A stretch of DNA of 64,000 nucleotides from Haliotis rubra. Taxonomy: Eukaryota. Position numbers and translations under genes: made by a program. Position 1 is the stretch's first letter, and each line of letters starts with the position of its first letter. Location: NCBI RefSeq assembly GCF_003918875.1, contig NW_025767277.1:1-64000 (forward strand). Reading direction: 5' to 3'. The notes beneath the pieces are model-generated. The model ran no database searches, was not told the origin of the DNA, and saw nothing but the letters and a program-made list of their open reading frames with translations. Shown piece by piece: positions 22,849 through 44,699 of this stretch.

Positions 22849-23298
22849 TCACTCATCTCCTTCCGACTTCCATATCTTTCGAAAACTCCTAAGATTTCGC
22901 ATACTACCTATGCCACTGTCCGCAGAAGCTAAAGATTCAGTTCTGACCAGCTTACTGTTCTTGGCAGCAGAAGCTGGAGCTTCAGACACCTGGTACTTTG
23001 ACTTTTTGCCCATTTTATTTTTTTTCAGACGTCGCCGACTGCTTGGGTAAATACCATCGTCAGAAGGCACAGATAGCCGTTTGATAACTGTTCTTTTAGG
23101 AGTTCTCATGTATGGACTTTCCGCACTGCCATCAGCAGGTACAGCTGACGGCACATCGCTGTTAGAAACGCTTGTCTTGTTCAAATGGTTGTTTGTGTCA
23201 GGACCCAGGACACCGTCAGCAGCAGCTACTGATGCCCCAGCCAATGGCGTCGTTTCTGTCTGCGTCTTGAAATAGATACGAAGAGCAAGTTGTTTCAT
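22849..23298 (-). other. Unassigned Ser/Ala/Lys-rich open frame, possible exon or gene relic
   Basis: 149-codon non-repetitive ORF with protein-like composition but no recognised domain. Confidence 0.2.
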
Positions 23299-25014: not shown

Positions 25015-25935
25015 TCCATCTGCTTCCTCCCATTGTTATTGTATCATTACCTACCCCATCTGCTATGTATATTTTGTTCCGCCTCCTCAACCTTGGCTTC
25101 CTCCCATTGTTATTGTATTATTACCTATCCCATCTGCTATGTATATCTTGTTCCGCCTCCTCAACCTTGGCTTCCTCCCACTGTTATTGTATTATTACCT
25201 ACCCCATCTGCTATGTATATCTTGTTCCGCCTCCTCAACCTTGGCTTCCTCCCATTGTTATTGTATTATTACCTACCCCATCTGCTATGTATATCTTGTT
25301 CCGCCTCCTCAACCTTGGCTTCCTCCCATTGTTATTGTATTATTACCTACCCCATCTGCTATGTATATCTTGTTCCGCCTCCTCAACCTTGGCTTCCTCC
25401 CATTGTTATTGTATTATTACCTATCCCATCTGCTATGTATATCTTGTTCCGCCTCCTCAACCTTGGCTTCCCCTCCCACTGTTATTGTATTATTACCTAC
25501 CCCATCTGCTATGTATATCTTGTTCCGCCTCCTCAACCTTGGCTTCCTCCCATTGTTATTGTATTATTACCTACCCCATCTGCTATGTATATCTTGTTCC
25601 GCCTCCTCAACCTTGGCTTCCTCCCATTGTTATTGTATTATTACCTACCCATCTGCTATGTACACCTTGTTCCACCTCCTCAACCTTGGCTTCCTCTCAT
25701 TGTTATTGTATTATTACCTACCCCATCTGCTATGTATATCTTGTTCCGCCTCCTCAACCTTGGCTTCCTCCCACTGTTATTGTATTATTACCTACCCCAT
25801 CTGCTATGTATATCTTGTTCCGCCTCCTCAACCTTGGCTTCCTCCCATTGTTATTGTATTATTACCTACCCCATCTGCTATGTATATCTTGTTCCGCCTC
25901 CTCAACCTTGGCTTCCTCCCATTGTTGTTGTATTA
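25015..25935. repeat. Minisatellite, 74-bp unit
   Basis: Tandem cccatctgctatgtatatcttgttccgcctcctcaaccttggcttcctcccattgttattgtattattacctac, about 12 copies. Explains three overlapping spurious ORFs. Confidence 0.95.
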
Positions 25936-26045
25936 TTACCTGTCCCATTGTTGTTGTTAATCCCTTTGATGTATTCCCCCATGTTGTCTTACTCAATCCC
26001 TGTTACGTGTATATAAGTCGGTTCTGTGCTGTATTACTTTACTCT

Positions 26046-26085: not shown

Positions 26086-27756
26086 TCATACAATCTGTAC
26101 TGGATATCTTGCTCGTCATCCTGCGTTTTCGTGGTTGTAGTCTTGCAGTAGTCTTGTATCACTGTACCCCACTCACGATTGAGAACCTTCGACTGTTAAA
26201 ACGAATTAACTGTACAACAAACTTCGAAACTGGAAAGTGTATCAACTTTCAGTAAACGGAACTGGATCCAGATGATATAAACAACACCTTCTCGTGACCA
26301 GGAATGAATACCAAGGAGACCACACCTCCAACAGCTGTCAAAATGTGATGCAAGTAAGAATGAAGGCAAATCCTAATTATAACCTGCAGTGAAGTACGTA
26401 TGTCTCGACTTTAGACGATCCCAATAATCCCCGGTGGAAGAAAACCCTTTCCAGAGACTGCAACTTGATAGTGTAAACATAGCAGGTCGGAATGACCTTG
26501 GATCCCCCGGATCGTGATGACAATAAGCGACTGTCAAAGCATTAAATACACTGTGAACTGTAATATTTCATACTGACGAGTAAATCACTCGCGACACTTG
26601 TGACTGATAACTGTACCTGTGACTGTACCTGTACATTTGAAGCATACGATCCTGTGATATTCCATCGGAATGAATACGGATCGATTGTTGGATTCTTGGG
26701 ACTGTCAGACGAAATCCGGATGTCAAAGTTGAAAATAACTCCCTAAAATCACTTATCCACAACTAGATACTTAAAGAGCAGACCAAGTGTTAATAACAGC
26801 CATGCTTATTAAAAGTTATGCAAATAAAAATCTCTTATAATGCCAAAAGTAGAATTTAGCTGTGACGCAACCCTGGAACCCTACCTTACTTGTAAAAGTC
26901 AAAATTGCCGCTCCGAAACTAACCTTGACCGGTCTATTTATAGGTGACCTAAGGTCACATGATACGCAAACGTGACGTCAGAATATCCAAGATAGCGACT
27001 GTAAACATGATTGAGCTTACTTGTGCTGGAATTTACTGTTATAGTTGAAACTGTAGTTTGGAAGCAGACTGCACAAAGGTATGTATCTTGGCTGGTATTA
27101 CTTTGGTGGTTGGGGGGCGTGATTATCTCAGTACTTGAAGACCTAGATTAGGCTGACTGACTGAATGACTTAATTTGGTTTTACGCCGCTTGAAGCAATA
27201 TTCCAGCAACATCACGGCGGGGGACACCAGAAATGGGCTTCACAAATTGTACCCATGTGGGGATTCGAACCCGGGTCTTCGGCGTGACGAGCCAACGCTT
27301 TAACCACTAGGTTACCCAACCGCCCCAGACCAAGATTAGACATGACTTTTTGTTACAATATATATATTTTTCACGGTTAGTTTGCTCTTTCCACCAAGTG
27401 AAATCTGTTTGTTAGTACTGTAAGACTAGCCATTCTTTTACAGGTTATTTAGTTGATTTTGTGGAATATTTTTCTGGTTCGGGCAAACAGTCGATCCAGA
27501 TCAATATAAACAGTGTTAACTTTCTAAACTAAACTTCAAGTTTCAAACTATTCTTGCCGAAAAAAAAAACAGATTAAAATTGCTTATAATCGTGTGTCTA
27601 TCGTTAGGTTTTTATGACTTGAACAATGGTGATACTCATAAAATTCTTCACAAGAACTCTACGATGCTGAAGATAATTATCGGTTTTGGAGTAGTAACTA
27701 AATCCTCAATACAAACTCACATAAAATACCAGTGTTAACACATATCGCCAATTACC

Positions 27757-27873
27757 TGGTAGGTCTAGATGCTCGGATGGTGATTGTGTGGATCCCGTAA
27801 TGTAGCATATCATGTCATCCTCCGACTCATAAGGTGTAGAACCAGTTGATGTTCCAGCGTCACTGTCGGACAT
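27757..27873 (-). CDS. Isolated putative first coding exon MSDSDAGTSTGSTPYESEDDMICYITGSTQSPSEHLDLP
   Basis: Upstream tatag acceptor, accATG start and CAG|GTAATT donor. The frame and both splice sites are conserved in an inverted paralog at ~42933-43050. Confidence 0.45.
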
Positions 27874-27958
27874 GGTTGCTTATCAAACTATACTCAAATG
27901 TCAAATGTTGATCTACGTGAATTATTAGTCATAGATTGAGCAGCTACTTCCCAACAGT

Positions 27959-29166
27959 TTAAGTATTAAAATGAGAGTGCATGATCTGTAATCTTCGAAG
28001 CCATTCAGAACGATTCATTCGACAAACATTTTCCGTCTTTGTCGCACCGCTATCTGTGACATAATATGTTCTGGGTCCTTCTTTGTCGTAGAACACAACT
28101 CCCTGACAATAACGAATGGCTACTTCCAATACAACTAAGCCAGCATTCCGTATGGTGTGGAATCTAATATCGACCAAGTCCCTTGGTCCTTCTGTAAAAT
28201 GTCCGTCACGATCCAAGACACAGATGTCAGTTTCCAGCTTCTTGTAAATGTGTTCTCTCAGAGACTCTTGTGATATGTCCAGCTTAAAACCAGTGTATTC
28301 CGGTTTCTTAGTTGTATATCCTTCTTTTGTTGTTAGATTTGATTCGCTAACACCCAAGAAGTATGACCCCCCACCAACAACCTTGGACATAGATGTAATG
28401 TTGTCCTTGAGCTTCAAATAGTTCCATATGTAGTCAGTCAACTGTTTAGCATCTCCCTTAATGCTTGTGACTTCTTTCGTGGCCTGGAATCTTTTCAGCT
28501 GTATATGTCGGTTCTCGTGAAGGTCCTGGACGTTATCTGGTAGTTTTGCAGTAGGGACGCTACCTGCTTGAGTTTCTGTTTTTCTCAGCAACACCTGTAT
28601 GTTTGATGAGTTGATGCTAAGATTTTCACTGTCATTAGTTGCTTTTGTGTTGAAATCAACAGTACATACACTCTCAACTTTCCCGACTGTTATCTGAACA
28701 AAGTCAGTAATATCTTCAAATGTTTCAATCTGACACAAACATTTACGTTCATAGACGTCAGTATAGAGTTCGCCGTTTTCAAGTAACCCTGTCAACTCAT
28801 TTCTGACGGCCTCGTCAAAGTACTCCAGACACCGGTCTTCCTCGGACGTCCCTTGTACGTGGACTAGCAACACTCCTCCACCACTGTTACGTAATGCTGA
28901 CGCTGCTTTGGCGACTTGATCCGCAAATCTCTTCTTTCCTGTTTTCTTTGATTCTTCTCCTTTCTTCTCCTGCCACCCTCGGTTAGAATCTTATATTCGG
29001 TGTGAACTGGTAAAAGTTTGTTGACTGGTTCACGGTTCTCCTTCTCTATGAATATCTTCCGTACTTGAGTACATCTGGAACACACACCTGTAATACAAAC
29101 AAATCCAACTGAAACAGTTGCACCTTCAAATTTGGCGTCCGTCGTCTTGCCAATCGTCTTGACCAA
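27959..29166 (-). CDS. Schlafen-like (AlbA_2) protein, one frameshift, 5' end cut off by a LINE
   Basis: Upstream of the annotated start, the 304-aa frame reads RFADQVAKAASALRNSGGGVLLVHV (SLFN ALLNSGGGV motif). The second lobe has HENRHIQLKRF, GGGSYFLGVSE and VVLEVAIRYCQGVVFY..P. Confidence 0.8.
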
Positions 29167-29171
29167 TAGCG

Positions 29172-31538
29172 CTACGATAGCTTTGTGAAGCGAGGCCAGG
29201 TTCTGTTACCTTCTCTATGGGGTGGTACACACACAAACTCTACAAAAGGCAAGGTCATAGAGGAATGTATTACCAATAATGATTTATGTATTTCTAATGA
29301 TTCCAATACATATTTGCACCCTGCTACAGGCACATATTCCTCACTTGATTTGTCACAAACAGATTCAAGACTGCTCAACGAATTCGAATGGTCAGTCCAT
29401 CATGACCTTTGTGGAAGTGACCATTTACAAACTTTACTTTCACTCGTTCATCCAGCTGATCTTCCCAATTCATCAAGAGATAATTTTACAAAGGCAAATT
29501 GGTCTTTATTTGAGACATTATGCCAACGTACAAGTACACCTGAGACCCAGAATTGCATCTAGCAGGCACTCCAATTAAAACTCTCGAGGAAGCTAAATTT
29601 CTGGGAAATATATTTGACGAACATCTTACTTTTCTTACCACATATTAAATCTCTGAGGGCTCAGTGTCTCGAAGGCACTTGATTTATTAAAGGTTGTTTC
29701 AAACTCCAAGTGGGGGAGGGGACCAGTTAACCCTTCTTCACTTATACAGATCACTCGTCCGTTCTAAACTCGACTATGGCTCCATCATTTATGGTGGAGC
29801 CTGCAAAAGTAATCCTAAATCGTTGGATTCTGTTCACCACTAAGGTGTCAAACTTCGTTTTGGATCTTTTCGAACTTCTATTGAAAGTATTTATGTAGAG
29901 GTTGATGAGCCATCTCTAACAACGCCGCACAAAATTATCCTTACAATATATCACCAAACTATATTCTAAAGAGTCTAACCCCTGCAATTAACTGTGTTTT
30001 TAATCCTCTTCACGAGGATCTGTACAACAAGAAGTCTGCTGTTATTCCGCCACTAGGAATAAGAATTAAACCCTTTCATGCTGGCATTAGTTGGATAATA
30101 TTTCTCTTTTGCGCATACTTTTTCTCCTCCTTTGCAGTTAGTGAGACCAGAAGTTGACCTATCACTCACACCATTTAAACAATCTGAAACTAATGAATTA
30201 CAATATAAACAAGAATTTAATCAATTAAAAAGTAAATACAATACATACAAGTCCTTATTTACAGATGGGTCCAATGATGGTGGCACAGTGGCTTGTGCCA
30301 CTGTCATTGGATCCAGAACAATATCTTCTCGACTACCAAACAACAGCTCTATTTTCACAGTGGAAGCTAACGCCATATTAACAGATGTTAAATATGTTAA
30401 TAGAGACCATAAATATAAACAATACATAATATATTCAGACTCTCTTCATGCCTTCATGCTGTAAAATGTGTCTTCTCAACATCCACTTTTAATTGAAATA
30501 CTAGAATTATTCAACGATCTGGCTACTGGTCAGTGCAACATCGTCCTCTATGTTGGCATTTCTGGTAACACAATGGCTGATCTTGCTGCTAAGGCAGCAC
30601 TCAACAAATCTGTAACACCACTACTGATCCCATATTCCGATTAGAAAGCTGTCGTTAGATCTTATATCCGTGATCTAATGCAAAAAGAGGTAGGACACCC
30701 AAGTAGGTATCAATAAATTAGATGCAATAAAACCAGTTATCGGTTACACCTACTTGGGTTGTCAGTCCAGATTGGAAGAGGTCATTATGCGACGATGTCG
30801 TATTGGCCATACTATATATACTCATGAGTACATATTTAAAGGCGAGGATCCTCCGTTTTGTATCCCTTGTGATGAAAGAATCATGGTCAAGCATGTCCTG
30901 CTTGACTGCATAGATTTTCCCATCACAAAGGCTAAATATGTCAGCGTTAAAACTGTTAAGGATATTTTTTGATAATGTTAATCATCATTTTATTATCGAG
31001 TTTTTAAAAGAAATAGAATTGCTTGCGAAAACGTTTTGAAGGGGGTTGAAGTATCGTAAACTTATTGTCCTTCTCAGAGGGTACGTCAGTCCCAAAACGT
31101 CAAAGTCAATTTTGCTCTACCAAACTTTTTAATCGTAGTATGTTTGTTGCTTTTAATAATGGCTACACCTCCGTACAATCTCAGCGGCTGTAGGGATGGT
31201 GTAGATCCAGCTAGGGTCCAGCTTGGGATATACGTAAATTTTGAAATTATGAATAATGATCTATTTATTCATTAACACACTGATAAAATATCAATCATAA
31301 AAATACCAATATCTCTAACTTATTTTGTCCAGTATATTGTGTATTGTCCAAATAATGCTATTAGTTTTAACTTTACATGCTAGTTTTAATTTAACTGCAA
31401 TAGTCTAGTTGTTTTACTGTCCTTGATCACAGGTGTTATAATACATACATATTGTTTATAAACATCCAATTTCTTCTCGTCACGATATGGCTGAAAATTG
31501 CCGATGTGACGTTGACTTTAACTCACTCACTCACTCAC
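29172..31538 (+). mobile_element. Nimb/I-group LINE remnant (APE fragment, most of RT deleted, RNase H, CCHC, 3' UTR)
   Basis: WGG...TY..P.TGTYSSLDLS...GSDH; LFTDGS, SIFTVEANAI, IYSDSL, GISGN.MADLAAK; CIPCDERIMVKHVLLDC; (ACTC)n tail. Confidence 0.9.
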
Positions 31539-31703
31539 ATGTGTTTACGACATGCTATGTTAAACGTCATAGTAAGCATCACTTACCTTCACCACCTGCA
31601 GGGGAGCTCATCATTCCACATCATCCTAGTTTAACGTCAAGGCGAAACCAATTCAGATGTAAAATATTCTCAGTCATATGACATGTGCGCACATACTTTA
31701 AAC

Positions 31704-34700
31704 ATGTAACCTTATCTGTACCTTGTTGCATGTGACACTGCTGATATATTTGATCATTACAAACAACATGTGATATATGATTACTTTATCTCTCGTAACT
31801 GACCTCATTGATATATGTCACATCGGCAATATTTCAGCCATGTTGTGACGTAAAAGTTATAAAGTAACAATAAACACAATTACATTATAAAACAACCGTC
31901 GACAAAGGACAGTAAAAAGGACTAGATTATCAAACGAATAAATTTAAGACTAGTAATTAAATCTAAAATACTTTAACTATAAGTGACAATACAATGTAAA
32001 AACAGGCTATAGATCGCAAACAACTGAAGGTAGATAACCATACTAGGAACCATGGGGACTTACATATTACTTTTGCTACCTGCATGGACCCTAACTGGAG
32101 TTACATCATACCTCAATTTAGACACATCTGGCCATACATTAAAAATACACATATTCTACGATTAACAAAGTGGAAAGTTCAATTTACTTTGAATGTTTTT
32201 TGGACTTACGTACCACCAGGAACCTTTGAAGCTGATCACTTCTGATCCCGTCACGCTCCATACGACAAACGTGAACTGATGAAGACTTTTCTTTTTTATG
32301 CATCAGGAACCATAGTTCAGCTGCAGTAAATTCACCCCATACAGTATATCTGGTGACAGTGTAATCAAGTACAGTACATTTGGCTTTACACGTATTGGTT
32401 CGAATCCCATACCCACCCTGATTATGGTTACTGGGTTGTCAACGCTACAACACTCTTCCCATGCTACCATTTGTCTCACGGCTTTAAAGTCTGCAGACCC
32501 TTTTGTTAAAGGTCAAACCTATAAAACAAAATAGACTACACTGTACAGTTTCACAATGGTTAGTTCTGTCATTATAACTAGTACAACACTGGAAATGTTG
32601 CTAGTGAGCTACAGTGAGCTTGCTAAGTCAAACAGCTCCTGATCACCAAAGTCATTCCTGAAAGACTGACTGAGTTTGGTTTTACGCCGCTTTGAGCAAT
32701 ATTCCAGCAAATATCACGGCGGGGACACCAGAAATGGGCTTCACACATTGTGCCCATGTGGGGATTCGAACCGGGTCTTCGGCGTGACGAGCCAGCGCTT
32801 TAACCACCAGGCTACCCAACCGCCCCATTCCTGAAAGAAGCATCTGCGTGTGCTTGTTTTTTGTTTTTTGCCGGTGGATCGACATCCTGTACAAATCGCT
32901 ACATTGCGAAACATGAAAGGGTGAAGGTCATTTCCAAAGTTCCTCCACACAACTAGGCTTTCTACAAAAATCAATTAGCAAACAAGTTATTACTTGTGAA
33001 AGACTGGTGGCGACATTCCTATGTGCAAACCGTTGATATACCAGGAAGTGAAACTGTAAGTTATCGTAAACATGATGGATCATGGATGATTCCCTAACTA
33101 TAATAAAGAATACAATTATGGGGAATGATTCCATTTGTAAAATATATTGACAGATAATTTACAGAAGGCCACAAAGGATTGCAAATATTTGAAACTGCCG
33201 GCCCGATACAATAACAACCGGCGCCGGGCCTCCGGGCCTCCGGGCCAGCGATTATTTCGAACGCTAGTCTCACCTGCATCAGGATCCACCCATCAGCTGA
33301 CATCCAATGACACCTGACGAGACACTGTGATGGAAATCACTAGCGAATTACCCTATTTCCTCTAAGATACGCCGGGTATGTATTCGCCCTTAATAAAAAA
33401 AAGATTAAGGCATGGTCCTTTTGGTCATAACTTCCTGTCCTCCCACAAGGCGGCTAAGCTGGTGAAAGGGGTTTTCATGTGTATAAATTTGTATGGGAAC
33501 CGGTGCTAGAGGAACGTTTACAGACCAATCTAAATCCTTGTAATGGCTATGACAGGTATGCTATATCGATAGTGAAAGACAGCAAGCGGACCTCAATAAG
33601 CCCCAGGGTCTGAAAGTCCGTTGTAAAAAGCACCCGAGCGCTTATTTGAGGAATATACTTTAAACATTAAATATTCCTTCTGCAGTAGGTGATAATATAC
33701 TGAGTCAAAAAGAAACTTCACAAAATGTAATTTGAAAAATAATGAATAATTTTTCTCTGATGATACATCTATGTATCCGAAATGGGATCCTATCTTTCGA
33801 CTCCTAGAAAAACGTTAGCAAAACCCACTCAAAACCCATCCATTCGTCGTGCAAATGACGTCCAGTGCCAAATCAGGTTTTGCACGTGCAGTCGATCACG
33901 TGATCTTCGCATCGAAGTTTTCTTCATATGCACGTGTTTGCATTGGCCTCAAGAATTGAAAAACACTTTTAAACCACATTTTCTAACGGTACTTGAAATG
34001 CCACGATTATCAAATGTGCAACGTCAAGCGTCTGCTGTGGGCCCCAACGTCACCTCCGATGGACCCAGAGAGACTGGAATCGAGTCGTCTTTAGAGATGA
34101 ATCCAGGTTTATCCTCAGATTCGCGGACGGCAGGCATAGAGTCTGGTGACGACGTCGTGAACGGTATGCCCAATGTTGTGTACAGGAAGTCGACAGATTC
34201 GGGTGCGGAAGTTGCATGGTTTTGGGGTGCTTTCTGTGGGAACAACCGTTCCCGACTTCTGGTCATCCGTGGAAACCTCGCAGCTGCTGCTTACCGCTAC
34301 CAGGTGCTCACCCTGAAACTCGTTCCTTTGATGGCAGCTCATGTCCCAGGTCCACAGTTCCAGCATGATAATGCTCGGCCGCATACCGCGATATTGACAC
34401 AATGTAACCTTATCTGTGTACCTTGCTTGCATGACACCACTGCTGATATATTTGATCATTACAAACAACATGTGATATATGATTACTTTATTCTCTCGTA
34501 ACTGACCTCATTGATATGTCACATCGGCAATATTTCAGCCATGTTGTGACGTAAAGTTAAAAAGTAACAATAAACACAATTACATTATAAAACAACTGTC
34601 GACAAAGGACAGTAAAAAGGACTAGATTATCAAACGAATAAATTTAAGACTAGTAATTAAATCTAAAATACTTTAACTATAAGTGACAATACAATGTAAA

Positions 34701-37087
34701 ACAGGCTATAGATCGCAAACAACTGAAGGTAGATAACCATACTAGGAACCATGGGGACTTACATTACTTTTGCTACCTGCATGGACCCTATGCTGGAGTT
34801 ACATCATACCTCAATTTAGACACATCTGGCCATACATTAAAATACACATATTCTACGATTAACAAAGTGGAAAGTTCAATTTACTTTGAATGTTTTGACT
34901 TACGTACCACCCAGGAACCTTGAAGCTGATCACCTGATCCCGTCACGCTCCATACGACAAACGTGAACTGATGAAGACTTTTCTTTTATGCATCAGGAAC
35001 CATAGTTCAGCTGCAGTAAATTCACCCCATACAGTATATCTGGTGACAGTGTCAGTACAGTACATTTGGCTTTACACGTATTGGTTCGAATCCCATACCC
35101 ACCCTGATTATGGTTACTGGGTTGTCAACGCTACAACACTCTTCCCATGCTACCATTTGTCTCACGGCTTTAAAGTCTGCAGACCCTTTTTGTTAAAGGT
35201 CAAACCTATAAAAACAAAATAGACTACACTGTACAGTTTCACAATGGTTAGTTCTGTCATTATAACTAGTACAACACTGGAAATGTTGCTAGTGAGCTAC
35301 AGTGAGTTTGCCAAGTCAAACAGCTCCTGATCACCAAAGTCATTCCTGAAAGACTGACTGAGTTTGGTTTTACGCCGCTTTTTGAGCAATATTCCAGCAA
35401 CATCACGGCGGGGACACCAGAAATGGGCTTCACACATTGTGCCCATGTGGGGATTCGAAACCCGGTCTTCGGCGTGACGAGCCAGCGCTTTAACCACTAG
35501 GCTACCCAACCGCCCCATTCCTGAAAGAAGCATCTGCGTGTGCTTGTTTTGTTTTTGCCGGTGGATCGACATCCTGTACAAATCGCTACATTGCGAAACA
35601 TGAAAGGGTGAAGGTCATTTCAAAGTTCCTCCACACAACTAGGCTTTCTACAAAAATCAATTAGCAAACAAGTTATTACTTGTGAAAGACTGGTGGCGAC
35701 ATTCCTATGTGCAAACCGTTGATATACCAGGAAGTGAAAACTGTAAGTTATCGTAACATGATGGATCATGGATGATTCCCTAACTATAATAAAGAATACA
35801 ATTATGGGGAATGATTCCATTTGTAAAATATATTGACAGATAATTTACAGAAGGCCACAAAGGATTGCAAATATTTGAAACTGCCGGCCCGATACATAAT
35901 AACAACCGGCGCCAGGCCTCGGGCCTCGGGCCAGCGATTATTTCGAACGCTAGTCTCACCTGCATCAGGATCCACCATCAGCTGACATCCAATGACACCT
36001 GACGAGACACTGTGACGGAAATCACTAGCGAATTACCCTATTTCCTCTAAGATACGCCGGGGTATGTATTCGCCCTTAATAAAAAAAGATTAAGGCATGG
36101 TCCTTTTGGTCATAACTTCCTGTCCTCCACAAGGCGGCTAAGCTGGTGAAAGGGTTTTCATGTGTATAAATTTTGTATGGGAACCGGTGCTAGAGGAATG
36201 TTTACAGACCAATCCTAAATCCTTGTAATGGCTTATGACAGGTATGCTATATCGATAGTGAAAGACAGCAAGCGGACCTCCAATAAGCCCGGGTCTGAAA
36301 GTCCGTTGTAAAAAGCACCTGAGCGCTTATTTGAGGAATATACTTTAAACATTAAATATTCCTTCTGCAGTAGGTGATAATATACTGAGTCAAAAAGAAA
36401 CTTCACAAAATGTAATTTGAAAATAATGAATAATTTTTCTGATGATGATACATCTATGTATCCGAAATGGGATCCCTATCTTTCGACCCTAGAAAACGTT
36501 AGCAAAACCCACTCAAACCCATCCATTCGTCGTGCAAATGACGTTAGTGCCAAATCAGGTTTTGCACGTGCAGTCGATCACGTGATCTTCGCATCGAAGT
36601 TTTCTTCATATGCACGTGTTTGCATTGGCCTCAAGAATTGAAAAAACACTTTTAAACCACATTTCTAACGGTACTTGAAATGCCACGATTGTCAAATGTG
36701 CAACGTCAACGTGTCGTCTGCTGTGGGCCCAACGTCACCTCCGATGGACCCAGAGAGACTGGAATCGAGTCGTCTTTAGCGATGAATCCAGGTTTACCCT
36801 CAGATTCGCGGACGGCAGGCATAGAGTCTGGAGACGACGTCGTGAACGGTATGCCCAATGTTGTGTACAGGAAGTCGACAGATTCGGGGGCGGAAGTTGC
36901 ATGGTTTGGGGTGCTTTCTGTGGGAACAACCGTTCCCGACTTCTGGTCATCCGTGGAAACCTCGCAGCTGCTGCTTACCGCTACCAGGTGCTCACCCCTG
37001 AACTCGTTCCTTTGATGGCAGCTCATCGCGTCCCAGGTCTACAGTTCCAGCATGATAATGCTCGGCCGCATACCGCGATATTGACAC
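31704..37087 (+). repeat. ~2.7-kb direct tandem duplication (31704-34401 and 34402-37087)
   Basis: Near-identical units differing mainly by 1-2 nt indels. Junction at ...gatattgacac|aatgtaaccttatc. Confidence 0.9.
31810..32218 (-). mobile_element. Nimb LINE 3' UTR fragment (second copy at ~34510-34910)
   Basis: Reverse-complement similarity to 31060-31520, including catggctgaaatattgccgatgtgac. Confidence 0.65.
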
Positions 37088-37172
37088 GAAATTTCCTTCA
37101 AAACGCTGGAATCAACGTCATGGACTGGCCATCGAGGTCCCCTGACCTTAATCCAATAGAGCACGTTTGGGA
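36381..37172 (+). mobile_element. Tc1 transposon, internally deleted, right end missing (partial copy at 33696-34400)
   Basis: Left end tatactgagtcaaaaagaaac. Reads MPRLSNVQRQR, WNRVVFSDESRF, GGSCMVWG, FQHDNARPHTA and WPSRSPDLNPIEHVWD (DD34E-type). Confidence 0.9.
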
Positions 37173-37926
37173 TGCAGACATTGTAAACCCATGTTTTGAA
37201 CGGCGGTGTAGCCTAATTTGTGTACATACACTGCAACGAATGTCCCTTGTCAACCAAGGTAAAGTAACACTAAGCACTATCAAATTTAGATCAAACAAAT
37301 AATTGAGAAACGAAAGGATGTACAAATGGAAACGACTCCCAGGTAAAGGAAGAAAGGAGATTACGTGCCCTCAGTTGCAAAATAAGTCATGGTTATTTCT
37401 TTGACATGCATCGGGTGGTCAGGCTTGTCTGACACATGTCGAATCCCAGTTGCGTAGATTTGGTGCCCATGATCACTGGATTGTCTGGTCCAGACGCCAT
37501 TATTTAAAGACCACCACCGTATAGCTGGAATATTGCTGAATGAGGCGTTTAACAGCACAGAAACAAACAAGCAAACTGACGAATGATTCCAGGAATCCCT
37601 GTATTAGTATTGCAATCAATGTGTATTCTAGAGTGAATGATTTCGATGTAACGATATATTGTTTTATGATTTGTACCAGTTTCATGAGTAATGAAAGCCG
37701 ATGAAAACTGACATGATTGAAACGTTCTTGGCTAATAAAAAAAAAAAAAGAATTGGCATAAACCATATCAACGCGTATATCACAAGAAATATTTGTTCAA
37801 CTTATGTTCCAATTTTTCATTGGCAGAATAATCTAATTATATATCAAAGGTATTTCATGCTACATTTAAAAAGTCCATACTGGCTGACAACATGAATGAC
37901 TGTGATCAGCAAAGTGGCTATATTTG

Positions 37927-38637
37927 CTACTCCCTGTTCCTGGTATCGGAGCTGACACATTTGCAGTCACCCACCACAACTAAGATCGCACCGCCTAACG
38001 AAAGAACTCTGGCGAACAATATGCATTTATTCTTCAGGCCATTGCTAGCAAAAAAATCACTTACAAGCGCCACGTTGAAGATACCGAAGGCGGCAATGCC
38101 TCCTATCCGAGGTACCATGTCCACAGGGAAGGGTAGAAGGTCTGCAGTGAACAGCCCTTGCATGATAACAGACACAGGAGTCACCAACAGCTGGTAGCCA
38201 GTCATCCATAATAGTTCAGTCGACATGAATGTTATACTGCGGAACACATTGACAACAGAAAGAAGGAAAGATATTATCACAAGAGCTATTTGTACTTCTG
38301 CTGTGTAAGGTACACTTGTTGACTTGTCCACGCCAACAATGACGGGGAAAGTACTTTTTCCAAGCATGGCACCTAGCCCTAGAAAGAATATACACTGCAT
38401 GATTTGCATAATTATTATCATCACAGTTGTACAATAGCTTTCATTTGGTATCAATGATGGTTTAATGGTGCTCACATCAGTCCAGTTTATGTTGTGTATG
38501 AGAGTCCCTTGAGGATGTGAGACAGCAGGTCCGTTGTCCCGAGAATCTGCGTCAGTAACATCACAGATGAGGTTCATGGCGTTTTCAGAAAGTGACGTAC
38601 AGTGTACTCTGTAAATACCGGCATCAGTCGGGACCAA
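37927..38637 (-). CDS. Putative multi-pass membrane protein ORF/exon (family unassigned)
   Basis: 236-codon ORF with several hydrophobic segments. Its 5' part overlaps transposon-like sequence, so the real coding part may be shorter. Confidence 0.4.
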   Translation of the reverse strand: MVPTDAGIYRVHCTSLSENAMNLICDVTDADSRDNGPAVSHPQGTLIHNINWTDVSTIKPSLIPNESYCTTVMIIIMQIMQCIFFLGLGAMLGKSTFPVIVGVDKSTSVPYTAEVQIALVIISFLLSVVNVFRSITFMSTELLWMTGYQLLVTPVSVIMQGLFTADLLPFPVDMVPRIGGIAAFGIFNVALVSDFFASNGLKNKCILFARVLSLGGAILVVVGDCKCVSSDTRNRE

Positions 38638-39339
38638 GTAAAAATGCCGGTTTTGACAGAGTGCCGGTTTAGCTAGGTTCGCTTATGACGCCTGCGCACA
38701 CGGAAGTTCGCTGTCGCACTGTCACTTTAGCATTAACAAGATGTTTGAATAAGAAACAAGGCAGTGTCTGAATGCACATTCATGTTGTTTAAATCAAATA
38801 AAAATGTCTGAAATCTCTTATTAAATTTCAACTGATCATATACATGTATTTGTGACAAGACCCGTGGATTCACCATTGTCCTCAATCTCTGATCGTTTTA
38901 TTACCAAAGAGCAATTTTTAAATGTCACAACATAGGCTTGAGATCCACTTGAACCCTGCAGTGTCCAAGCCAGGCTGAGATTTTTGGGAGAAAACAGACT
39001 TGCCCACAGAGATAGAGATTCTCGTGTTACGGTGAAAACTGATTCATGTTGTTGCACCAGTTGGTAACAGAATCTATATAACAGGTTACAGGTTATCTTC
39101 GAAGGTGTAGTCTTCACTGAACCTGTTAAACGCCCAAGCCAAGACTTGTCCTTCTTCATAATAATAATAATCCTCAGTTGCAGATCTTTCCGAAACCCTG
39201 TGTATATTTTGTTTCATTCTATTTATGATGAAATATCTGACATACCTTTAGAAGAACGGAGGCCAATTAAACAAACAACTGAATCTTTTCCCCAAAATGA
39301 AATTAATTTATTAAATGATATTATTTCTATGAAACTTTC

Positions 39340-39604
39340 TGCGGAGACCCGGCGCTTAAAGTTTCCACGGATATAAATATAGATTTTATTATTAGTAGTA
39401 AATACCATTAGTATTCTATTTGGAAACTCCTTTGTAAACATGTGGCACACCCGGCGCTTATTAGAGACCCGGCGCTTATTAGAGACCCGGCGCTTATTAG
39501 AGACCCGGCTCTTATTGGAGACCCGGCGCTTATTAGAGACCCGGCGCTTATTTCTTGAACAGTTGCTTTACCCCCGGCACTTATTGGAGGCCGGCGCTAA
39601 CGGT
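39340..39604. repeat. 18-bp subterminal tandem repeats (gagacccggcgcttatta) of a DNA-transposon/MITE end
   Basis: About 6-7 copies ending at ...ctaacggta, resembling pogo/Tc1-like CCGT...ACGG termini. Confidence 0.55.
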
Positions 39605-39887
39605 AAGTTAGATGGGTGGGACTGTTATGCATAAACAATCTGGTAATTCACGTGCTCGCTCACAGCCTGACAAGCGTAGTGTCTTTTCCTCACTGTCGAC
39701 GGGGTATTGTGTAGGTACATTCTTTGTTCGTGTTGCACAATGTTGGACTTCATGTTACACTTCCTGGATCTTGGACTGTTAGGTACACAAATATTCCTGA
39801 CTGTCCTTGCACAGGGATTTATCTGAACCAGCTCCGAGCCCGATAAGTCGAACGGTGGTAAACATTCCCAGTTTGGTTAAAAAAATA

Positions 39888-41332
39888 TACACTCTTCAAA
39901 AAAAGGAACGCAAAATGAAATTCAAGAATGATACTTACAATTGTGTACACATATGTAAACTCAAACATTATTTTAGGGTTGTACATTGTTTCTGGAATGT
40001 TTTAGAAGATCATGCTTGACCAAACGCAACCAAAAATGATTTTGAACGGTTTTATCGATCAGGATTGTCATGATGTGCGTGGATGTCATGCAGCACGAAT
40101 ATCAGGCACAATGATTGTTTCTCACGTGCAAAGCATGAGTAAAGCATGTGATTATAAAAGACCCAAATGAATCTCACAATTTTATCCGCGATCTTTGCAA
40201 GTACTGTACACGAAAATGGGACGTCTCAACGCTGCCGATCGAAATAGGGCAATTGGACGATTGCAAGCCGGCGAATCAAGCAAAAAAATTCGACAAATGA
40301 CCGTCCAAGATCAGGAAGACCTAGAGTCACCACACCTGCCCAAGATCGGTACATCCGGGTAACCCACCTACGTGACCGCCATCGTACCGCCCGGGACACA
40401 GCACAAGAACAGTTTGGAGCCCGAAGAGTCTCCGATCAGACAATCAGGAGCCGTCTCCGAGAAGTAGGGATACTTGCCAAACGTCCTCCCCCTGACACGA
40501 CTACTTCGACGTCGACGAGTGAGATGGTGTAACACGGCGCTGCCATGGAACCTGGCAAACTGGAGGCGCATATGGTTGAATCCCGTTATCTCCTCAGGCG
40601 ACGTGATGGTAGAGACCGTGTCTACAGACAACGTCATGAACGTTTTGCTCCTAACTGCATTAGACAGGTGGACAGATTCGGTGAAGAAAGTGTTATGGTG
40701 TGGGGAGCGATCTCATACACCCGCTGATCGGAACTTGTGCTTGTCCAAGGCAATCTGACGGCCTATCGATACATCGACCAGATTCTCCGTCCGCACGTCC
40801 TTCACTTTGTTGACCGTCAACGGCAGCTCTTCCAACAGGACAACGCCAGGCCCCACACAGCACGTGCCACCGTGGACTACCTGGCCAATAACAACATCAA
40901 TACCCTCCCCTGGCCCTCCAGATCCCCGGATCTAACCCAATCGAACACCTTTGGGATCAGATCGATAGACGGGTACGTCGACGTCGTATTCCACCACAGA
41001 ATCTTCAACAGTTGTTCCACATGCTGCAGGAGGAATGGTGAAGGATTCCACAACAAAACATCCAACGACTGATTCGATCTGTACCCAGGAGGTGTCGGGC
41101 AGTGGTAGCAGCTGGAGGTGGTCATACGAGGTACTGACTTCAACACCACCTGGTGGACAGCAGTAATGACTGTGATGACTGTTATTCTCATGACATATGG
41201 ACAAGATAGCAATGCATTGCTCCACAAAATTTCATTCATGTATCTTTGTTTTCCGCTGATCTACACGTCCTTGAATAACACCAAATATTCATTGATATTT
41301 GGGTTTTGCGTCTCTTTTTTTTGAAGAATGTA
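39888..41332 (+). mobile_element. Tc1 transposon with both TIRs and a decayed transposase
   Basis: TIRs tacactcttcaaaaaaaggaacgcaaaa / ttttgcgtctcttttttttgaagaatgta. Reads MGRLNAADRNRAIGRLQAGE, RPRSGRPRVTT, FQQDNARPHTA, WPSRSPDL and GGHTRY*. The first catalytic Asp (FSD) is deleted. Confidence 0.92.
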
Positions 41333-41849
41333 TTTATAGATAACAAAATATCATTTCTCAGAAATAAGAGTTTTGTTTTTTTGCCGGGGCACAGTATCAA
41401 CTGCTTGACGTTGGTGTCGCCTTGTCGAAATGATTATCGAGTCGACTGGGTCTGTGACCAGAATGCCCTTCCACCAAGCAGCCTTGGCACCTCGGCAGTC
41501 GTACACCTATGTTAAAATGTGGGGGTGAAGATCGCCTTAGTACTGAGATCGCTAAACATTTGTACAACGACACCATGGTTTATTGTTCGTCCGTTGTTGC
41601 TAAAGTTCGATAACTGATACTTGGAGACAATCGGGATGTAATCTCAGTTCGACATTAAACATCATTGACGACAACATACTCAATCAGTTTCTAATTTACA
41701 TCATAACGCACAGTGCTGTTGGCTGATAACAATGACATTTCAACCGTCTTGTTTATCCTCTTATCTGTTTTTCCTTCCGTCTTCGTTAGTGAGGTTATCG
41801 TGATGAAGTGTCTGAGATAAGGACAGCCTGCTTTGTTATTTTGACTGTT

Positions 41850-41997
41850 NNNNNNNNNNNNNNNNNNNNNNNNNNNNNNNNNNNNNNNNNNNNNNNNNNN
41901 NNNNNNNNNNNNNNNNNNNNNNNNNNNNNNNNNNNNNNNNNNNNNNNNNNNNNNNNNNNNNNNNNNNNNNNNNNNNNNNNNNNNNNNNNNNNNNNNN
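41850..41997. other. Assembly gap
   Basis: Run of N. Confidence 1.
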
Positions 41998-42894
41998 AGA
42001 ATAACCCTGAATATAGCCACGCTTTGTGGTTAATGTATGCTTTAAAGCAGAAGTTAGGTTATTCGTCAGCTTCTTCCAAATACTAAACATTATATAGTTT
42101 TTGTCGACAACTCTCTTATTTATGACGTAATCATGTAGCAGCTGTCCTGCCGACGTAGATAAGGCCGGCGGACCAGGAAGCGGTCACCGACGTCACCCCG
42201 ACACTCTCTACCTGTCATTCTTTGTTGTGTTCCTACAGGTAGACAGACGGAGCTATGGGTGTTTTAGTCGGATGGTCGGATGCATATCAATTTTGCGGTA
42301 GACAGACGGAGCTATGGGTGTATGCATATCAACAGTGAGTTATTGCCCCTGCATGTGAACGACGTGTGTTACCATGGTAACGTGACGATATAACGTTAAC
42401 TATTATCCGACCTGCTAGGCGATATACGACGATATATGTGAATAATGTGTATCACGCTGATAACTACACCATGTGATGTGTGCGATAAGAGTTATTTTCA
42501 TATACCGATAAATAATCTATTATATGGTCACTGATAATATGGACCATTTTGCACATACAATACTGGCTGTCGGCACATGTCCATATTGACCACCGGGCCG
42601 AAAATGCATATCAGTCATATCAGCCCTAGGGCCGAAAATCTATATCAACCATATCACCCCTAGGGCCGAAAGTCTATATCGGACGTATTGCAGGGTTACT
42701 AAACTGGACACACGCAAACGAAACTTCAATAGACGGAGCCTAGTTTATTTTAGAGTTACGTCCCTTTATGTCGTATTATGTTTAAACAGTCAGGATATGA
42801 CAGTTTCCAATTCGCCAGTCACATCAGCCCGAGGATGCTGGCTTAGTTGTGATAGAAGTTGCCATTACTTCATATATATAATAACTCACGTAGA

Positions 42895-43420
42895 ACAACA
42901 TTTGACATTTGTGTATAGTTATATAACCAACCATGTCCGACAGTGACGCTGGAACATCAACTGGCTCTACACCTTATGAGTCGGAGGATGACATGATATG
43001 CTACATCACTGGATCCACACACTCACCATCCGAGCATCTAGATCTAGCAGGTAATTGGCGATATATATTAACACTAGTTATTCTTCTCAGCTTCCATTGA
43101 TTCAGATATTGATTATGTAGTTACTATTTCAAAACTAGAATGTCTTCCTCATTTGAAGTTCTTTTTAAAGAATTTCATAAGTATCACTTTTTTTCATGTC
43201 AAAGAAACCTGAAAATGCCCTGCACTAACAGTAAGAGAGGCAAGAGTTAGAATCTTATATTCGGTGTGAACTTGTAAAAAAGTTTGTTGACTGGTTCACG
43301 GTTCTCCTTCTCTATGAATCTCTTCCGTACTTGAGTACATCTGGAAACACACACCTGTAATACAAACAAATCCAACTGAAACAGTCACACCTTCATTTAA
43401 CGTCCGGTCGTCTTGACAAT
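42895..43420. pseudogene. Rearranged paralog of the Schlafen locus
   Basis: 42895-43210 is an inverted copy of 27605-27915. 43245-43420 is a direct copy of 28980-29165. Confidence 0.75.
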
Positions 43421-44699
43421 GGGTTTCAAAGGCAAGAAGTTTCTATATCTTGCTTTATATGGAAACTTTTAAACATTTTGTCACTTGGTTTCATTCGTGA
43501 TAACGAGGCACATTTAAGAGAGGAGTGGTCTCACGCCCCTTTAGCAATATTTCAACAGAGGAAGACACCAGGCTTCACACATTTTATCCATGTTGGGAAT
43601 GGAACCAGGGTCTTCGGCGTGACGAGAGAACTTTCACACAGAACAGATGTAACAGTACTTTACATACCATACTACTGAGTATTATGACATATCTCAAGTT
43701 TGTTTATTCACCGCTTGGATCTTGGTGAACATGATTCAGAAACTGACTACAACTATTTAGCCATGATCATCCTTATCCTGATACCCTGACCCAAAGTGAG
43801 CTATCTGGGAACCCACCACTTGGTTACTGTAAGTTCAGTCACGTTGCTTTCATTCCTTTTTTATCCGACTTTGACGAGCACCAAGAACCAAGAAGTGCCG
43901 ACATGTTTTCACTCATGTCTACTCAGTTTACTTGGCAACAGACATGATTAACCATGGAGAATATGCTAACAAATATAATTCACATTGTCCTTTAGGACAT
44001 TAACTGTAAAATACCATGTTAACCATTACCAACCTTCATCACCTCTGGTCACGTTCATCATTCCTCATTTTGTTTTGCACACCTGCTATAGAAATAGGTA
44101 AATTAATTGAATTACCTTTAATTAATAGGTGATTCAGATTTAAATGTTCTCAGTCGAATGATTGAATGAAGTTAATAAAAATAAAGATGAAACACGTACC
44201 TACAATGGCTAACAATATATACCTGTCAGGTTGTGTACTTACCTAAACCAGTTTGACAAACAGGCTTCTTCGTGGTAAGGTCCCCGATTTCCTACTAACG
44301 CATTCATGCAGCCCGCCACACACACACCTTATGTTACTTCTTTGTTGCGACCATGACACTGCTTTGAATACGCAGGCATGTACCAGGTCGTGGTGCACCT
44401 ATAGCAGTAGGCTGGCTTGAAACCTCCCGTGATATCGATTATATATCAATCTCCTTGCTGATTTATTGATCTATGTCAGTTCATGTAACGGAGCTATGTG
44501 CAGTTGTAAAATCCAATAAATCGATTTATTAATTCGAACCTATTTGAATTTTAACTAGACTGGTTTGTTGAATTAACATATGGCGTGTTCAAAGCGTTAC
44601 ACTTAAAATATAATATGTTTAATATATACTAAGCTAATTACAACTGGATGAGAAAACTATTGTAAGGTAAAATGCATCTTTTAAACAAGAAAAGTATAA

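What the first reader, a model, noticed from the sequence alone, without database searches (positions are those of the whole stretch)
27959..29166. Invertebrate Schlafen-like two-lobed nuclease
Seen: joining the two ORFs across a frameshift gives HTEYKIL...RFADQVAKAASALRNSGGGVLLVHV (N-lobe) and HENRHIQLKRF...GGGSYFLGVSE...VVLEVAIRYCQGVVFY (C-lobe). The ORF stops right after the core, with no helicase. Known: vertebrate SLFN11/13/14 cores have ALLNSGGGV and an E-x4-E-x-K tRNA/rRNA-cleaving site with antiviral roles, and nematode SLFN-like proteins process piRNA precursors. Here the second Glu is Gln in the C-lobe while the N-lobe keeps an EYK. Inference: a mollusc innate-immune or small-RNA nuclease family with a possibly relocated or altered active site.
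Basis: partly seen in the sequence, partly recalled or inferred. Interest (0 to 1): 0.75.

Follow-up and report, generated by a model that had tools for sequence, protein, structure and literature searches.

The report
Abalone stand-alone Schlafen-core gene
This is the main exon of an expressed blacklip-abalone gene for a short protein with the complete two-lobed fold of the mammalian antiviral Schlafen RNases; the apparent frameshift is a one-base gap found only in this assembly, and the odd Gln in the active site is a normal, recurrent state of a large snail-specific family.

Summary
On the minus strand, two ORFs (29087-28960 and 28990-27959) join across a frameshift into one Schlafen-like coding exon. 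The frameshift is a 1-nt deletion at 28962/28963. All four public runs laid on it carry the extra base, which restores ...TEGGRRRQGEESKK... An older Haliotis rubra assembly has an intact 380-aa model (LOC124290936, "uncharacterized"). Two RNA-like runs hold contigs that splice exon 1 (window 44061-44034) onto exon 2, so the gene is expressed.

Identity is firm. An AlphaFold model of the 380-aa protein matches only Schlafen N-domains (Foldseek E 5.6e-14; Z 21.9 over 301 residues to SLFN13). A 67-member family profile hits the SLFN11 core at E 2.2e-23. The protein stops after the core, with no linker or helicase.

The catalytic motif is E196-x4-Q201-x-K203 plus E253. Gln is the majority state in the family (43 Q, 18 E) and has flipped at least 7-10 times on the family tree, while the other site residues stay conserved. 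The N-lobe "EYK" is not conserved, so relocation of the active site is not supported. The canonical Schlafen zinc-finger cysteines are absent.

Named relatives are all gastropods. Nuclease activity and an immune role are untested. The scan described a paralog in this genome earlier (s1-347400).

The parts
27959..29087 (-). Coding exon 2 of the Schlafen-core gene, including the stop codon at 27959-27961. It encodes residues 10-380 of the RefSeq model P0001.
   Evidence: ORFs and translations. tblastn of P0001 on the window. P0001 is 333/334 identical to the main ORF. RNA-like contigs end their match at the acceptor.
28962..28963 (-). Site of the 1-nt deletion that causes the apparent frameshift. 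Other data have a C here on the coding strand: AGA CAA GGA, giving ...RRRQGEE...
   Evidence: In one search, table 4, a G is put in behind 28962 in all contigs of all four runs (X1, X3, X6, X7). The paralog P0002 reads KRRQGEE.
44034..44061 (-). Coding part of exon 1 (ATG ATG AAC GTG ACC AGA GGT GAT GAA G = MMNVTRGDE+G), with a GT donor at 44033-44032.
   Evidence: tblastn of P0001 residues 1-10. The loose ends of the X6 and X7 contigs beyond 29089 match 44036 onward exactly.
29088..44033 (-). Intron 1 as assembled (14.9 kb). It holds a LINE fragment, a decayed copy of the start of exon 2, and an N gap at 41850-41997. In the older assembly the same intron is 663 nt.
   Evidence: Whether the long form is real was not testable.
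29071..29082 (-). Codons of C12-S-R-C15, an N-terminal CxxC conserved in the family.
   Evidence: C12 is present in 46 and C15 in 48 of the 67 aligned members; nearly all the rest are alignment gaps at that column.
28874..28897 (-). N-lobe hallmark ALRNSGGG. Vertebrate Schlafens have ALLNSGGGV here.
   Evidence: Searches align it on SLFN11, SLFN12, SLFN13 and SLFN14. N72 is invariant in 67 of 67 members.
28493..28519 (-). C-lobe motif H195-E196-N-R-H-I-Q201-L-K203, the counterpart of the Schlafen catalytic E-x4-E-x-K.
   Evidence: The profile alignment places it on SLFN11 ESQSIEFK, SLFN12 ESTHVEIK and SLFN14 ESTHVEFK.
28343..28375 (-). GGGSYFLGVSE. E253 (28345-28343) is the counterpart of the third catalytic acid, the GVDD motif of SLFN11 and SLFN14.
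   Evidence: for the alignment. E253 is present in 62 of 67 members.
43250..43354 (-). Decayed, truncated duplicate of the first ~105 nt of exon 2. It has frameshifting extra T's and breaks off at ATTCTAAC. It lies just downstream of exon 1.
29185..30650 (+). Fragment of a non-LTR retrotransposon (endonuclease and RNase H pieces) directly upstream of exon 2. It is highly repeated in the genome.
   Evidence: Pfam Exo_endo_phos_2 at E 3.7e-7 and a weak RNase_H hit. Contig depth rises to thousands from 29116 on (table 2).

Best explanation
SHOWN. Window 29087-27959 (minus strand) is the main coding exon of a blacklip-abalone gene, spliced to a 28-nt first coding exon. In RNA-like contigs and in another assembly it is intact. 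It encodes a ~380-385 residue cytosolic-type protein that consists only of a Schlafen core: two AlbA_2-like lobes forming the Schlafen horseshoe, with no SWADL linker and no helicase. That is the architecture of mouse group I Schlafens. The frameshift in the window is a single missing base, an assembly error or a rare null allele. The gene belongs to a large, fast-evolving family found in the gastropods looked up, which standard annotation leaves 'uncharacterized'.

INFERRED. The protein binds structured RNA (tRNA or rRNA type) in the groove between the lobes and cuts it with a metal-dependent C-lobe site made of E196, Q201, K203 and E253. Position 201 tolerates only Glu or Gln. It flips repeatedly between them while the other three residues stay fixed, so I read Gln as a working variant of the site and not a dead one. 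A defence role is plausible by analogy and from the family's expansion, but it is untested. The confidence given (0.8) is for the SHOWN part; for the inferred active-nuclease mechanism I put about 0.45.
For: Identity:
- Single sequence: the best PDB hit is SLFN11 (E 0.17). Pfam SLFN_AlbA_2 scores 16.7 bits, below the cut-off.
- The 26-member Haliotis profile hits the SLFN11 core at 6.6e-7, and all top hits are Schlafens.
- The 67-member profile hits SLFN11 at 2.2e-23, SLFN12 at 5.8e-21, SLFN14 at 1.3e-18, SLFN5 at 2e-17 and SLFN13 at 2.9e-16, over the whole core.
- AlphaFold model: pLDDT 81, pTM 0.80. Foldseek's top 25 are all SLFN N-domains, best E 5.6e-14. VIA-align gives Z 21.9, rmsd 3.8 A over 301 residues to SLFN13-N, and Z 15-20 to SLFN14, 11, 5 and 12.

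Intactness and expression:
- All four runs carry the extra base at 28962.
- The older assembly has an uninterrupted exon 2.
- Contigs in X6 and X7 join exon 1 to exon 2.
- dN/dS is 0.27-0.34 against the H. asinina ortholog.

Active site:
- Position 201 is Q in 43, E in 18 and something else in 6 members.
- The tree needs at least 10 E/Q changes, at least 7 of them forced by well-supported branches.
- 41 of 43 Q-members and 18 of 18 E-members keep E196, K203 and E/D253. Five of the 6 members with another residue at 201 have also lost at least one of these; the sixth, P0089, only has conservative D201 and R203.

Family:
- 185 cluster representatives at E<=1e-3.
- All named ones are Haliotis, Littorina or Batillaria.
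Against: - No biochemical data exist. In mammalian Schlafens, mutating a catalytic Glu abolishes cleavage: SLFN11 E209A and SLFN14 E211A are the nuclease-dead forms in PDB entries 7zep and 9uie, and TOFU-2 E216A is dead in PMC10567574. Glu-to-Gln is a classic inactivating change, so Q201 proteins could be non-catalytic binders.
- The canonical Schlafen zinc-finger cysteines are missing.
- I could not inspect model coordinates, so the geometry of the site and of the candidate C12/C15/H81/H315 metal site is unverified.
- The RNA evidence is Logan contigs from runs only guessed to be RNA, though spliced contigs argue for RNA. These contigs differ from the window by about 3%, so they come from another individual or a sister species.
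- The frameshift could be a genuine null allele in the sequenced animal.
Confidence: 0.8

Rival explanations
1. Non-catalytic Schlafen core. The Q201 proteins bind RNA but do not cut it. They could shield tRNA as mouse SLFN2 is reported to do, or act as the inactive partner of an E201 paralog in a hetero-oligomer, as TOFU-1 and SLFL-3/4 do beside catalytic TOFU-2 in nematode PUCH.
For: - Q replaces the second catalytic Glu.
- Each abalone genome holds both Q-type and E-type paralogs.
- PUCH shows that Schlafen cores lacking catalytic residues work as subunits (PMC10567574).
- SLFN5 keeps the site yet is reported to be defective as an RNase (PMC9256597).
Against: - 41 of 43 Q-members keep E196, K203 and E253. 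Five of the 6 members with another residue at 201 have also lost one or more of them, which is not expected if Q meant a dead site.
- Q and E interconvert at least 7-10 times, and almost nothing else is tolerated at that position.
Confidence: 0.3
2. This copy is a pseudogene. The 1-nt deletion is real in the sequenced animal, and the rearranged upstream region (LINE insertion, 14.9-kb intron, decayed duplicate of the exon start) marks a decaying locus.
For: - The frameshift is in the assembly.
- Upstream of 29154 the window is not collinear with the older assembly.
- Other Schlafen-related copies in this genome were reported broken (s1-322290 and s1-344788; not checked here).
Against: - Every contig of four runs from three studies has the base.
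- Downstream of the indel, the 1002-nt CDS differs from the intact allele at one position and has no stop.
- The spliced transcripts carry exactly this exon-1 variant (GAT) and this exon-2 variant (TEGGRRRQ).
- The deletion lies in a purine run (AGAAGA-AAGGAG) that is typical of consensus errors.
Confidence: 0.12
3. The active site has moved to the N-lobe, using the E40-Y-K42 of HTEYK.
For: Pfam SLFN_AlbA_2 aligns its N-terminal E-x-K region on residues 40-42. The Haliotis Q-type clade P0001-P0012 keeps E40.
Against: - Across 67 members, position 40 is D in 20, E in 9, N in 6, K in 4 and so on. Position 42 is D, S, E, T or K.
- There is no conserved acid-x-Lys pair in the N-lobe.
- The C-lobe site remains conserved in the same proteins.
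Confidence: 0.03
4. The gene is carried by a virus or mobile element, like the poxvirus v-Slfn, and is not a host gene. A Maverick/adintovirus-like element was noted by a first reader at 52-63 kb.
For: Mobile-element sequences flank the locus (note s1-344827, not checked here).
Against: - The gene has a spliced two-exon structure.
- It has relatives annotated in three other Haliotis species (H. asinina, H. rufescens, H. cracherodii) and further paralogs in H. rubra.
- Its paralog has the same host neighbour type, an ankyrin-repeat gene.
- It lies more than 20 kb from the noted element.
Confidence: 0.03

Closest known systems
Mammalian Schlafen N-terminal core domains (rat SLFN13-N 5yd0; SLFN11 7fex/7zel; SLFN14 9nyy; SLFN12 7lre; SLFN5 6rr9)
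   Same: The whole two-lobed fold matches (Z 15-22 over 271-301 residues). Shared motifs are the N-lobe AL(R/L)NSGGG, the C-lobe E-x4-(E)-x-K strand, the GG(S)-x3-G-x2-(E/D) acid, and the C-terminal F-x-(D/E)-x-(G)P-x-(Y/W)...W.
   Different: - About 15-19% identity.
- The second catalytic Glu is Gln here.
- The canonical zinc-finger Cys/His are not conserved.
- There is an extra N-terminal CxxC helix.
- No SWADL linker and no helicase.
- Pfam does not reach its cut-off on the single sequence (16.7 against 25.3 bits).
Mouse group I Schlafens (Slfn1, Slfn2): core-only proteins of about 340-380 residues
   Same: The architecture is the same: the Schlafen core alone (PMC9256597). The length is similar.
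   Different: Orthology is not shown. The gastropod family is an independent, lineage-specific expansion. The mouse proteins keep the vertebrate zinc finger (PMC9256597). From my own knowledge, not checked here, SLFN2 is reported to protect tRNA and not to cut it.
Nematode PUCH subunits (TOFU-1, TOFU-2, SLFL-3/4)
   Same: These are invertebrate Schlafen-fold proteins without a helicase. Some subunits lack catalytic residues and act with a catalytic partner (PMC10567574).
   Different: The PUCH subunits have transmembrane or other extensions and work as an obligate trimer on capped piRNA precursors. No partner, complex or small-RNA link was tested here. They did not appear in my PDB or profile hits.
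Paralog in the same genome described earlier by this scan (s1-347400)
   Same: It is the same snail-specific stand-alone Schlafen-core family, also lacking the zinc finger and also annotated 'uncharacterized'.
   Different: That copy is reported with an intact E-x4-E-F-K motif. This one is the Q201 type and carries an assembly frameshift.

Membership tests
Schlafen core (SLFN N-domain) | Two-lobed, pseudo-dimeric horseshoe fold made of two AlbA_2-like lobes | tested here: met
   AlphaFold model with pLDDT 81 and pTM 0.80. Foldseek's top 25 are all SLFN cores, best E 5.6e-14. VIA-align gives Z 21.9, rmsd 3.8 A over 301 residues spanning 16-376.
Schlafen core (SLFN N-domain) | Significant sequence homology to known Schlafens | tested here: met
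   The family profile A3 against PDB gives SLFN11 2.2e-23, SLFN12 5.8e-21, SLFN14 1.3e-18, SLFN5 2e-17 and SLFN13 2.9e-16. The single sequence is only marginal: PDB E 0.17 and Pfam PF04326 at 16.7 bits against a cut-off of 25.3. Sixteen of 26 members give sub-threshold Pfam hits.
Schlafen core (SLFN N-domain) | Catalytic triad: Glu-x4-Glu-x-Lys strand plus a downstream Asp/Glu in the C-lobe | tested here: not met
   E196, K203 and E253 are present and align on the SLFN11, SLFN12 and SLFN14 residues, but the second Glu is Gln (Q201). In the family, 18 of 67 members have the full motif.
Schlafen core (SLFN N-domain) | [quoted passage not shown] | tested here: not met
   The columns aligned to SLFN12 and SLFN14 'FCC' and 'HFC' carry Cys in 4-6 of 67 members. 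The family conserves C12, C15, H81 and H315 instead. Whether these form a metal site was not testable without coordinates.
Schlafen core (SLFN N-domain) | Endoribonuclease activity on tRNA or rRNA | not testable with these tools
   This needs a recombinant protein assay.
Group I (core-only) Schlafen architecture | The protein ends after the core, with no SWADL linker and no helicase | tested here: met
   A stop follows directly after the last core helix. The structural alignment ends at model residues 373-380. Most listed hits are roughly 330-450 residues long, though about 20 representatives are 480-800 residues.
Group III Schlafens (SLFN11/13/14 type) | C-terminal superfamily-1 helicase/ATPase domain | tested here: not met
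   No such domain is in the ORF or in the RefSeq model. The next gene starts 86 nt after the stop and is an unrelated Ser-rich protein.
PUCH-type nematode Schlafen nuclease | Obligate hetero-trimer of Schlafen-fold subunits acting on piRNA precursors | not tested
   No interaction or small-RNA data are available. This is only an analogy (PMC10567574).

The most novel reading that the evidence does not exclude
Gastropods run their own expanded family of core-only Schlafens. In it the second catalytic residue acts as an evolutionary toggle: Glu-type and Gln-type paralogs would have different activities, for example cutter versus binder or regulator, possibly pairing as in PUCH. A new Cys2-His2 metal site (C12, C15, H81, H315) would replace the vertebrate zinc finger. 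That would be a distinct mechanistic branch of Schlafen immunity or RNA processing in molluscs.
Probability: 0.2. Interest if true: 0.65.

Novelty: new member of a known kind. Interest (0 to 1): 0.4.

Why it matters
A recent review calls Schlafens 'a vertebrate gene family' (PMC9256597). Nematode PUCH and bacterial Schlafens have since widened that view.

This locus shows that snails carry a large family of core-only Schlafens: at least 185 clusters at 50% identity. Annotation pipelines leave them as 'uncharacterized', and Pfam misses them on single sequences.

The repeated Glu/Gln exchange at one catalytic position, with the rest of the site held constant, is a natural mutational series. It could tell Schlafen biochemists what that residue really does.

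For abalone aquaculture, where herpesvirus and Vibrio cause disease, the family is a candidate set of innate-immune effectors to include in expression studies.

For the assembly, the result flags a single-base error and a doubtful 15-kb intron.

Tried and rejected
- Single-sequence searches were inconclusive: PDB phmmer E 0.17 and Pfam below its cut-off. Only the family profiles settled identity.
I therefore used the exhaustive profile search, because the question of distribution was open.
- I looked for the second exon of the downstream gene using the loose end of the X7 contig. It does not occur in the window, even with 3 mismatches.
- A look-up of earlier findings by sequence was blank.
- I considered the N-lobe EYK as a relocated site and rejected it on conservation.
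- I considered a viral or mobile origin and rejected it on gene structure and on relatives in other Haliotis species.
- Model coordinates are not exposed, so I could not measure distances in the active site or in the candidate C12/C15/H81/H315 metal site.
All full-length analyses used the public protein P0001 (333/334 identical over the main ORF) or the pieces by reference.
- The N run at 41850-41997 was left as it is.

Full report
**What is there.**
On the minus strand, an ORF runs from 28990 to a stop at 27959-27961 (343 codons, ending HSHFNT*). One frame over, a second ORF covers the upstream part...VCSRCTQVRKIFIEKENREPVNKLLPVHTEYKILTEGGRRRK. The upstream ORF is coding only from 29087, which follows a polypyrimidine tract and AG (ttgtattacag|GT).

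**Which genome and which gene.**
- The word-index protein search returned 26 proteins, all from Haliotis. The best is 'uncharacterized protein LOC124290936 [Haliotis rubra]' (P0001, 380 aa). It is 333/334 identical to the main ORF.
- Its contig in the older assembly GCA_003918875.1 (locus L001) has a 28-nt first coding exon (MMNVTRGDE), a 663-nt intron and an uninterrupted exon 2.
- The window is therefore another assembly or haplotype of blacklip abalone. Downstream of the indel, its CDS differs from L001 at one of 1002 positions.

**The frameshift.**
- Against L001 the window has 14 extra bases just after ATTCTAA. It keeps the TEGG(R/K)RR(Q) segment seen in paralog P0002 and in H. asinina P0003, but it is one base short of being in frame. 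L001 is 15 bases shorter than the paralog, which leaves it in frame (RTK).
- I laid Logan contigs of four public runs on 27500-30500. The runs are X1 (organism A, DNA-like), X3 (organism B), and X6 and X7 (organism B, RNA-like), from three studies.
- Every contig in all four runs has an extra G behind plus-strand 28962. On the coding strand this reads AGA CAA GGA GAA, that is ...TEGGRRRQGEESKK..., which is in frame and matches the paralog's ...KRRQGEE... (table 4).
- The frameshift is therefore private to this assembly. It lies in a purine run and is most simply a consensus error. A rare null allele cannot be excluded without the assembly's own reads.

**Expression and gene structure.**
- The X6 and X7 contigs stop matching at the acceptor and continue with letters whose reverse complement is ATGATGAACGTGACCAGAGGTGATGA, which is exon 1 (table 7).
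- This string occurs in the window at 44036 and onward, giving a first coding exon at 44061-44034 with a GT donor at 44033-44032. It carries the window's GAT codon, not L001's GAC.
- Spliced contigs mean these runs are RNA and that the gene is transcribed and spliced.
- As assembled, intron 1 is 14.9 kb. It contains a non-LTR retrotransposon fragment directly upstream of exon 2 (29185-30650, plus strand; Pfam Exo_endo_phos_2 E 3.7e-7). It also contains a decayed, truncated duplicate of the first ~105 nt of exon 2 (43354-43250) and an N gap (41850-41997, left untouched).
- I could not decide whether this long form is real or an assembly artefact.

**Identity.**
- The single sequence gives only hints. 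The best PDB hit is SLFN11 at E 0.17. Pfam SLFN_AlbA_2 scores 16.7 bits against a cut-off of 25.3.
- A profile of the 26 Haliotis proteins (A2) hits the SLFN11 core at 6.6e-7, and every top hit is a Schlafen.
- The exhaustive profile search found 185 cluster representatives at E<=1e-3, of which 138 are at E<=1e-10. Most are about 330-450 residues.
- Of the 20 representatives I looked up, all that carry names come from Haliotis species, Littorina saxatilis or Batillaria attramentaria. All are 'uncharacterized' or 'hypothetical'.
- A 67-member alignment (A3) used as a profile hits SLFN11 at 2.2e-23, SLFN12 at 5.8e-21, SLFN14 at 1.3e-18, SLFN5 at 2e-17 and SLFN13 at 2.9e-16, across the whole core.
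- The AlphaFold model of P0001 built from A2 has pLDDT 81 and pTM 0.80. Foldseek's first 25 matches are all Schlafen N-domains, best 5.6e-14.
- VIA-align gives Z 21.9 (rmsd 3.8 A, 301 residues, model 16-376) to SLFN13-N, and Z 15-20 to SLFN14, 11, 5 and 12. The single-lobe relatives SAMD9 and bacterial AlbA_2 proteins follow at Z 8-10 on the C-lobe only.
- The two-lobed Schlafen core is thus established by both sequence and fold. The protein ends with the last core helix, so it has the core-only (group I) architecture described in PMC9256597.

**Active site.**
- The A3 profile alignment puts the family's 'pfqEsrsiqaKsf' on SLFN11 PFPESQSIEFKQF, SLFN12 FTESTHVEIKNF and SLFN14 FTESTHVEFKRF. It puts 'GGsvylGieE' on GGSLFIGVDD.
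- In P0001 the site is therefore E196, Q201, K203 and E253.
- Family-wide counts (67 members):

| Position | Residue counts |
|---|---|
| 196 | E in 61 |
| 203 | K in 62 |
| 253 | E in 62 |
| 201 | Q in 43, E in 18, other in 6 |

- On a maximum-likelihood tree built without the motif columns, the Q/E state needs at least 10 changes, at least 7 of them forced by well-supported branches.
- 41 of 43 Q-members and 18 of 18 E-members keep E196, K203 and E/D253. Five of the six members with another residue at 201 have also lost one or more of these; the sixth (P0089) has only conservative D201 and R203.
- My inference is that Gln is a tolerated, functional state of the site and not a marker of a dead enzyme. 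The caveat is that Glu-to-Ala mutants of mammalian and nematode Schlafens are inactive (PDB titles; PMC10567574). Only an assay can decide.
- The N-lobe 'EYK' is not conserved. Position 40 is D, E, N, K or T, and position 42 is D, S, E, T or K. A relocated site is therefore not supported.

**Other differences from vertebrate Schlafens.**
[quoted passage not shown] They are not conserved here: Cys occurs in 4-6 of 67 members at the aligned columns.
- The family instead conserves an N-terminal C12-x2-C15 at the start of a helix, plus H81 and H315. That these form a substitute metal site is a hypothesis I could not test, because model coordinates are not exposed.

**Selection and context.**
- dN/dS is 0.27-0.34 against the H. 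asinina ortholog and 0.53-0.63 against the recent paralog P0002, which lies on the same H. rubra contig about 100 kb away. This is purifying selection, but relaxed or fast, as in many lineage-specific immune families.
- The paralog locus also has an ankyrin-repeat gene downstream. The window has one as well (15210-16232). This suggests a duplicated block.
- The next gene starts only 86 nt after the stop (ATG at 27873). One X7 contig runs from the Schlafen 3' end through that exon to its splice donor.

**Relation to earlier scan notes.**
The scan has already described a paralog elsewhere in this genome as a stand-alone Schlafen-core gene of a large snail-specific family lacking the zinc finger (s1-347400). 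My independent tests agree. That note came after my own analysis and did not shape it. Other notes report Schlafen-GIMAP fusions in this genome; I did not check them.

The pieces were searched by reference, and full-length work used the public protein P0001.

**Verdict.**
It is wrong on relocation and on the frameshift being a feature of the gene. It is untested on function.
- This is a new member of a known kind. It belongs to a divergent gastropod family with an interesting natural Glu/Gln series at a catalytic position.
- Interest is moderate.

Noticed in passing
window 28960-28990, compared with L001:10790-10830: There are two allelic forms of the linker before the N-lobe. The window and the RNA contigs encode TEGGRRRQ. 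The older H. rubra assembly encodes RTK, which is 15 nt shorter and in frame. DNA contigs of X1 and X3 also show K/R variants at 28944 and 28970. The region is a purine-rich indel hotspot.
   Followed up: partly
window 43250-44300: Exon 1 and the start of its intron are followed by a decayed, frameshifted duplicate of the first ~105 nt of exon 2, which breaks off at ATTCTAAC. That is the same point where the two alleles start to differ. This stretch is 92% identical to the older assembly, against 98-99% for the rest of the gene. It may be a rearrangement or an assembly artefact. An N gap lies at 41850-41997.
   Followed up: partly
window 27768-27873 (minus): Another gene starts 86 nt after the Schlafen stop (MSDSDAGTSTGS..., donor at 27768). 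In the older assembly it is called as a 191-residue product. One RNA-like contig (X7) spans the Schlafen 3' end and this exon, so there may be read-through or overlapping UTRs. A Ser-rich ORF at 22849-23298 (minus) may be its last exon.
   Followed up: partly
window 25022-25948: A minisatellite with a period of about 74 nt, seen as staggered self-matches against L001 and as long repetitive ORFs on the plus strand. It probably lies in an intron of the downstream gene.
   Followed up: no
window 29185-30650 (+) and 20140-22496 (-): Retrotransposon fragments. The first is an endonuclease (Exo_endo_phos_2) plus a weak RNase H hit, directly upstream of exon 2, with contig depth in the thousands. The second is a reverse transcriptase (RVT_1, E 8.5e-31) at 20872-21870.
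   Followed up: partly
window 15210-16232 (-) and L002:17377-18021: An ankyrin-repeat ORF lies downstream of the Schlafen-core gene in the window (Ank_2, E 5e-75). An ankyrin-repeat gene also lies downstream of the paralog P0002. This suggests a duplicated Schlafen-ankyrin block.
   Followed up: no
P0048 (798 aa), P0059 (606 aa), P0113 (723 aa), P0127 (666 aa): A few family members in Haliotis and Batillaria are about twice as long, with the core at one end. They may carry extra domains or be fused gene models.
   Followed up: no
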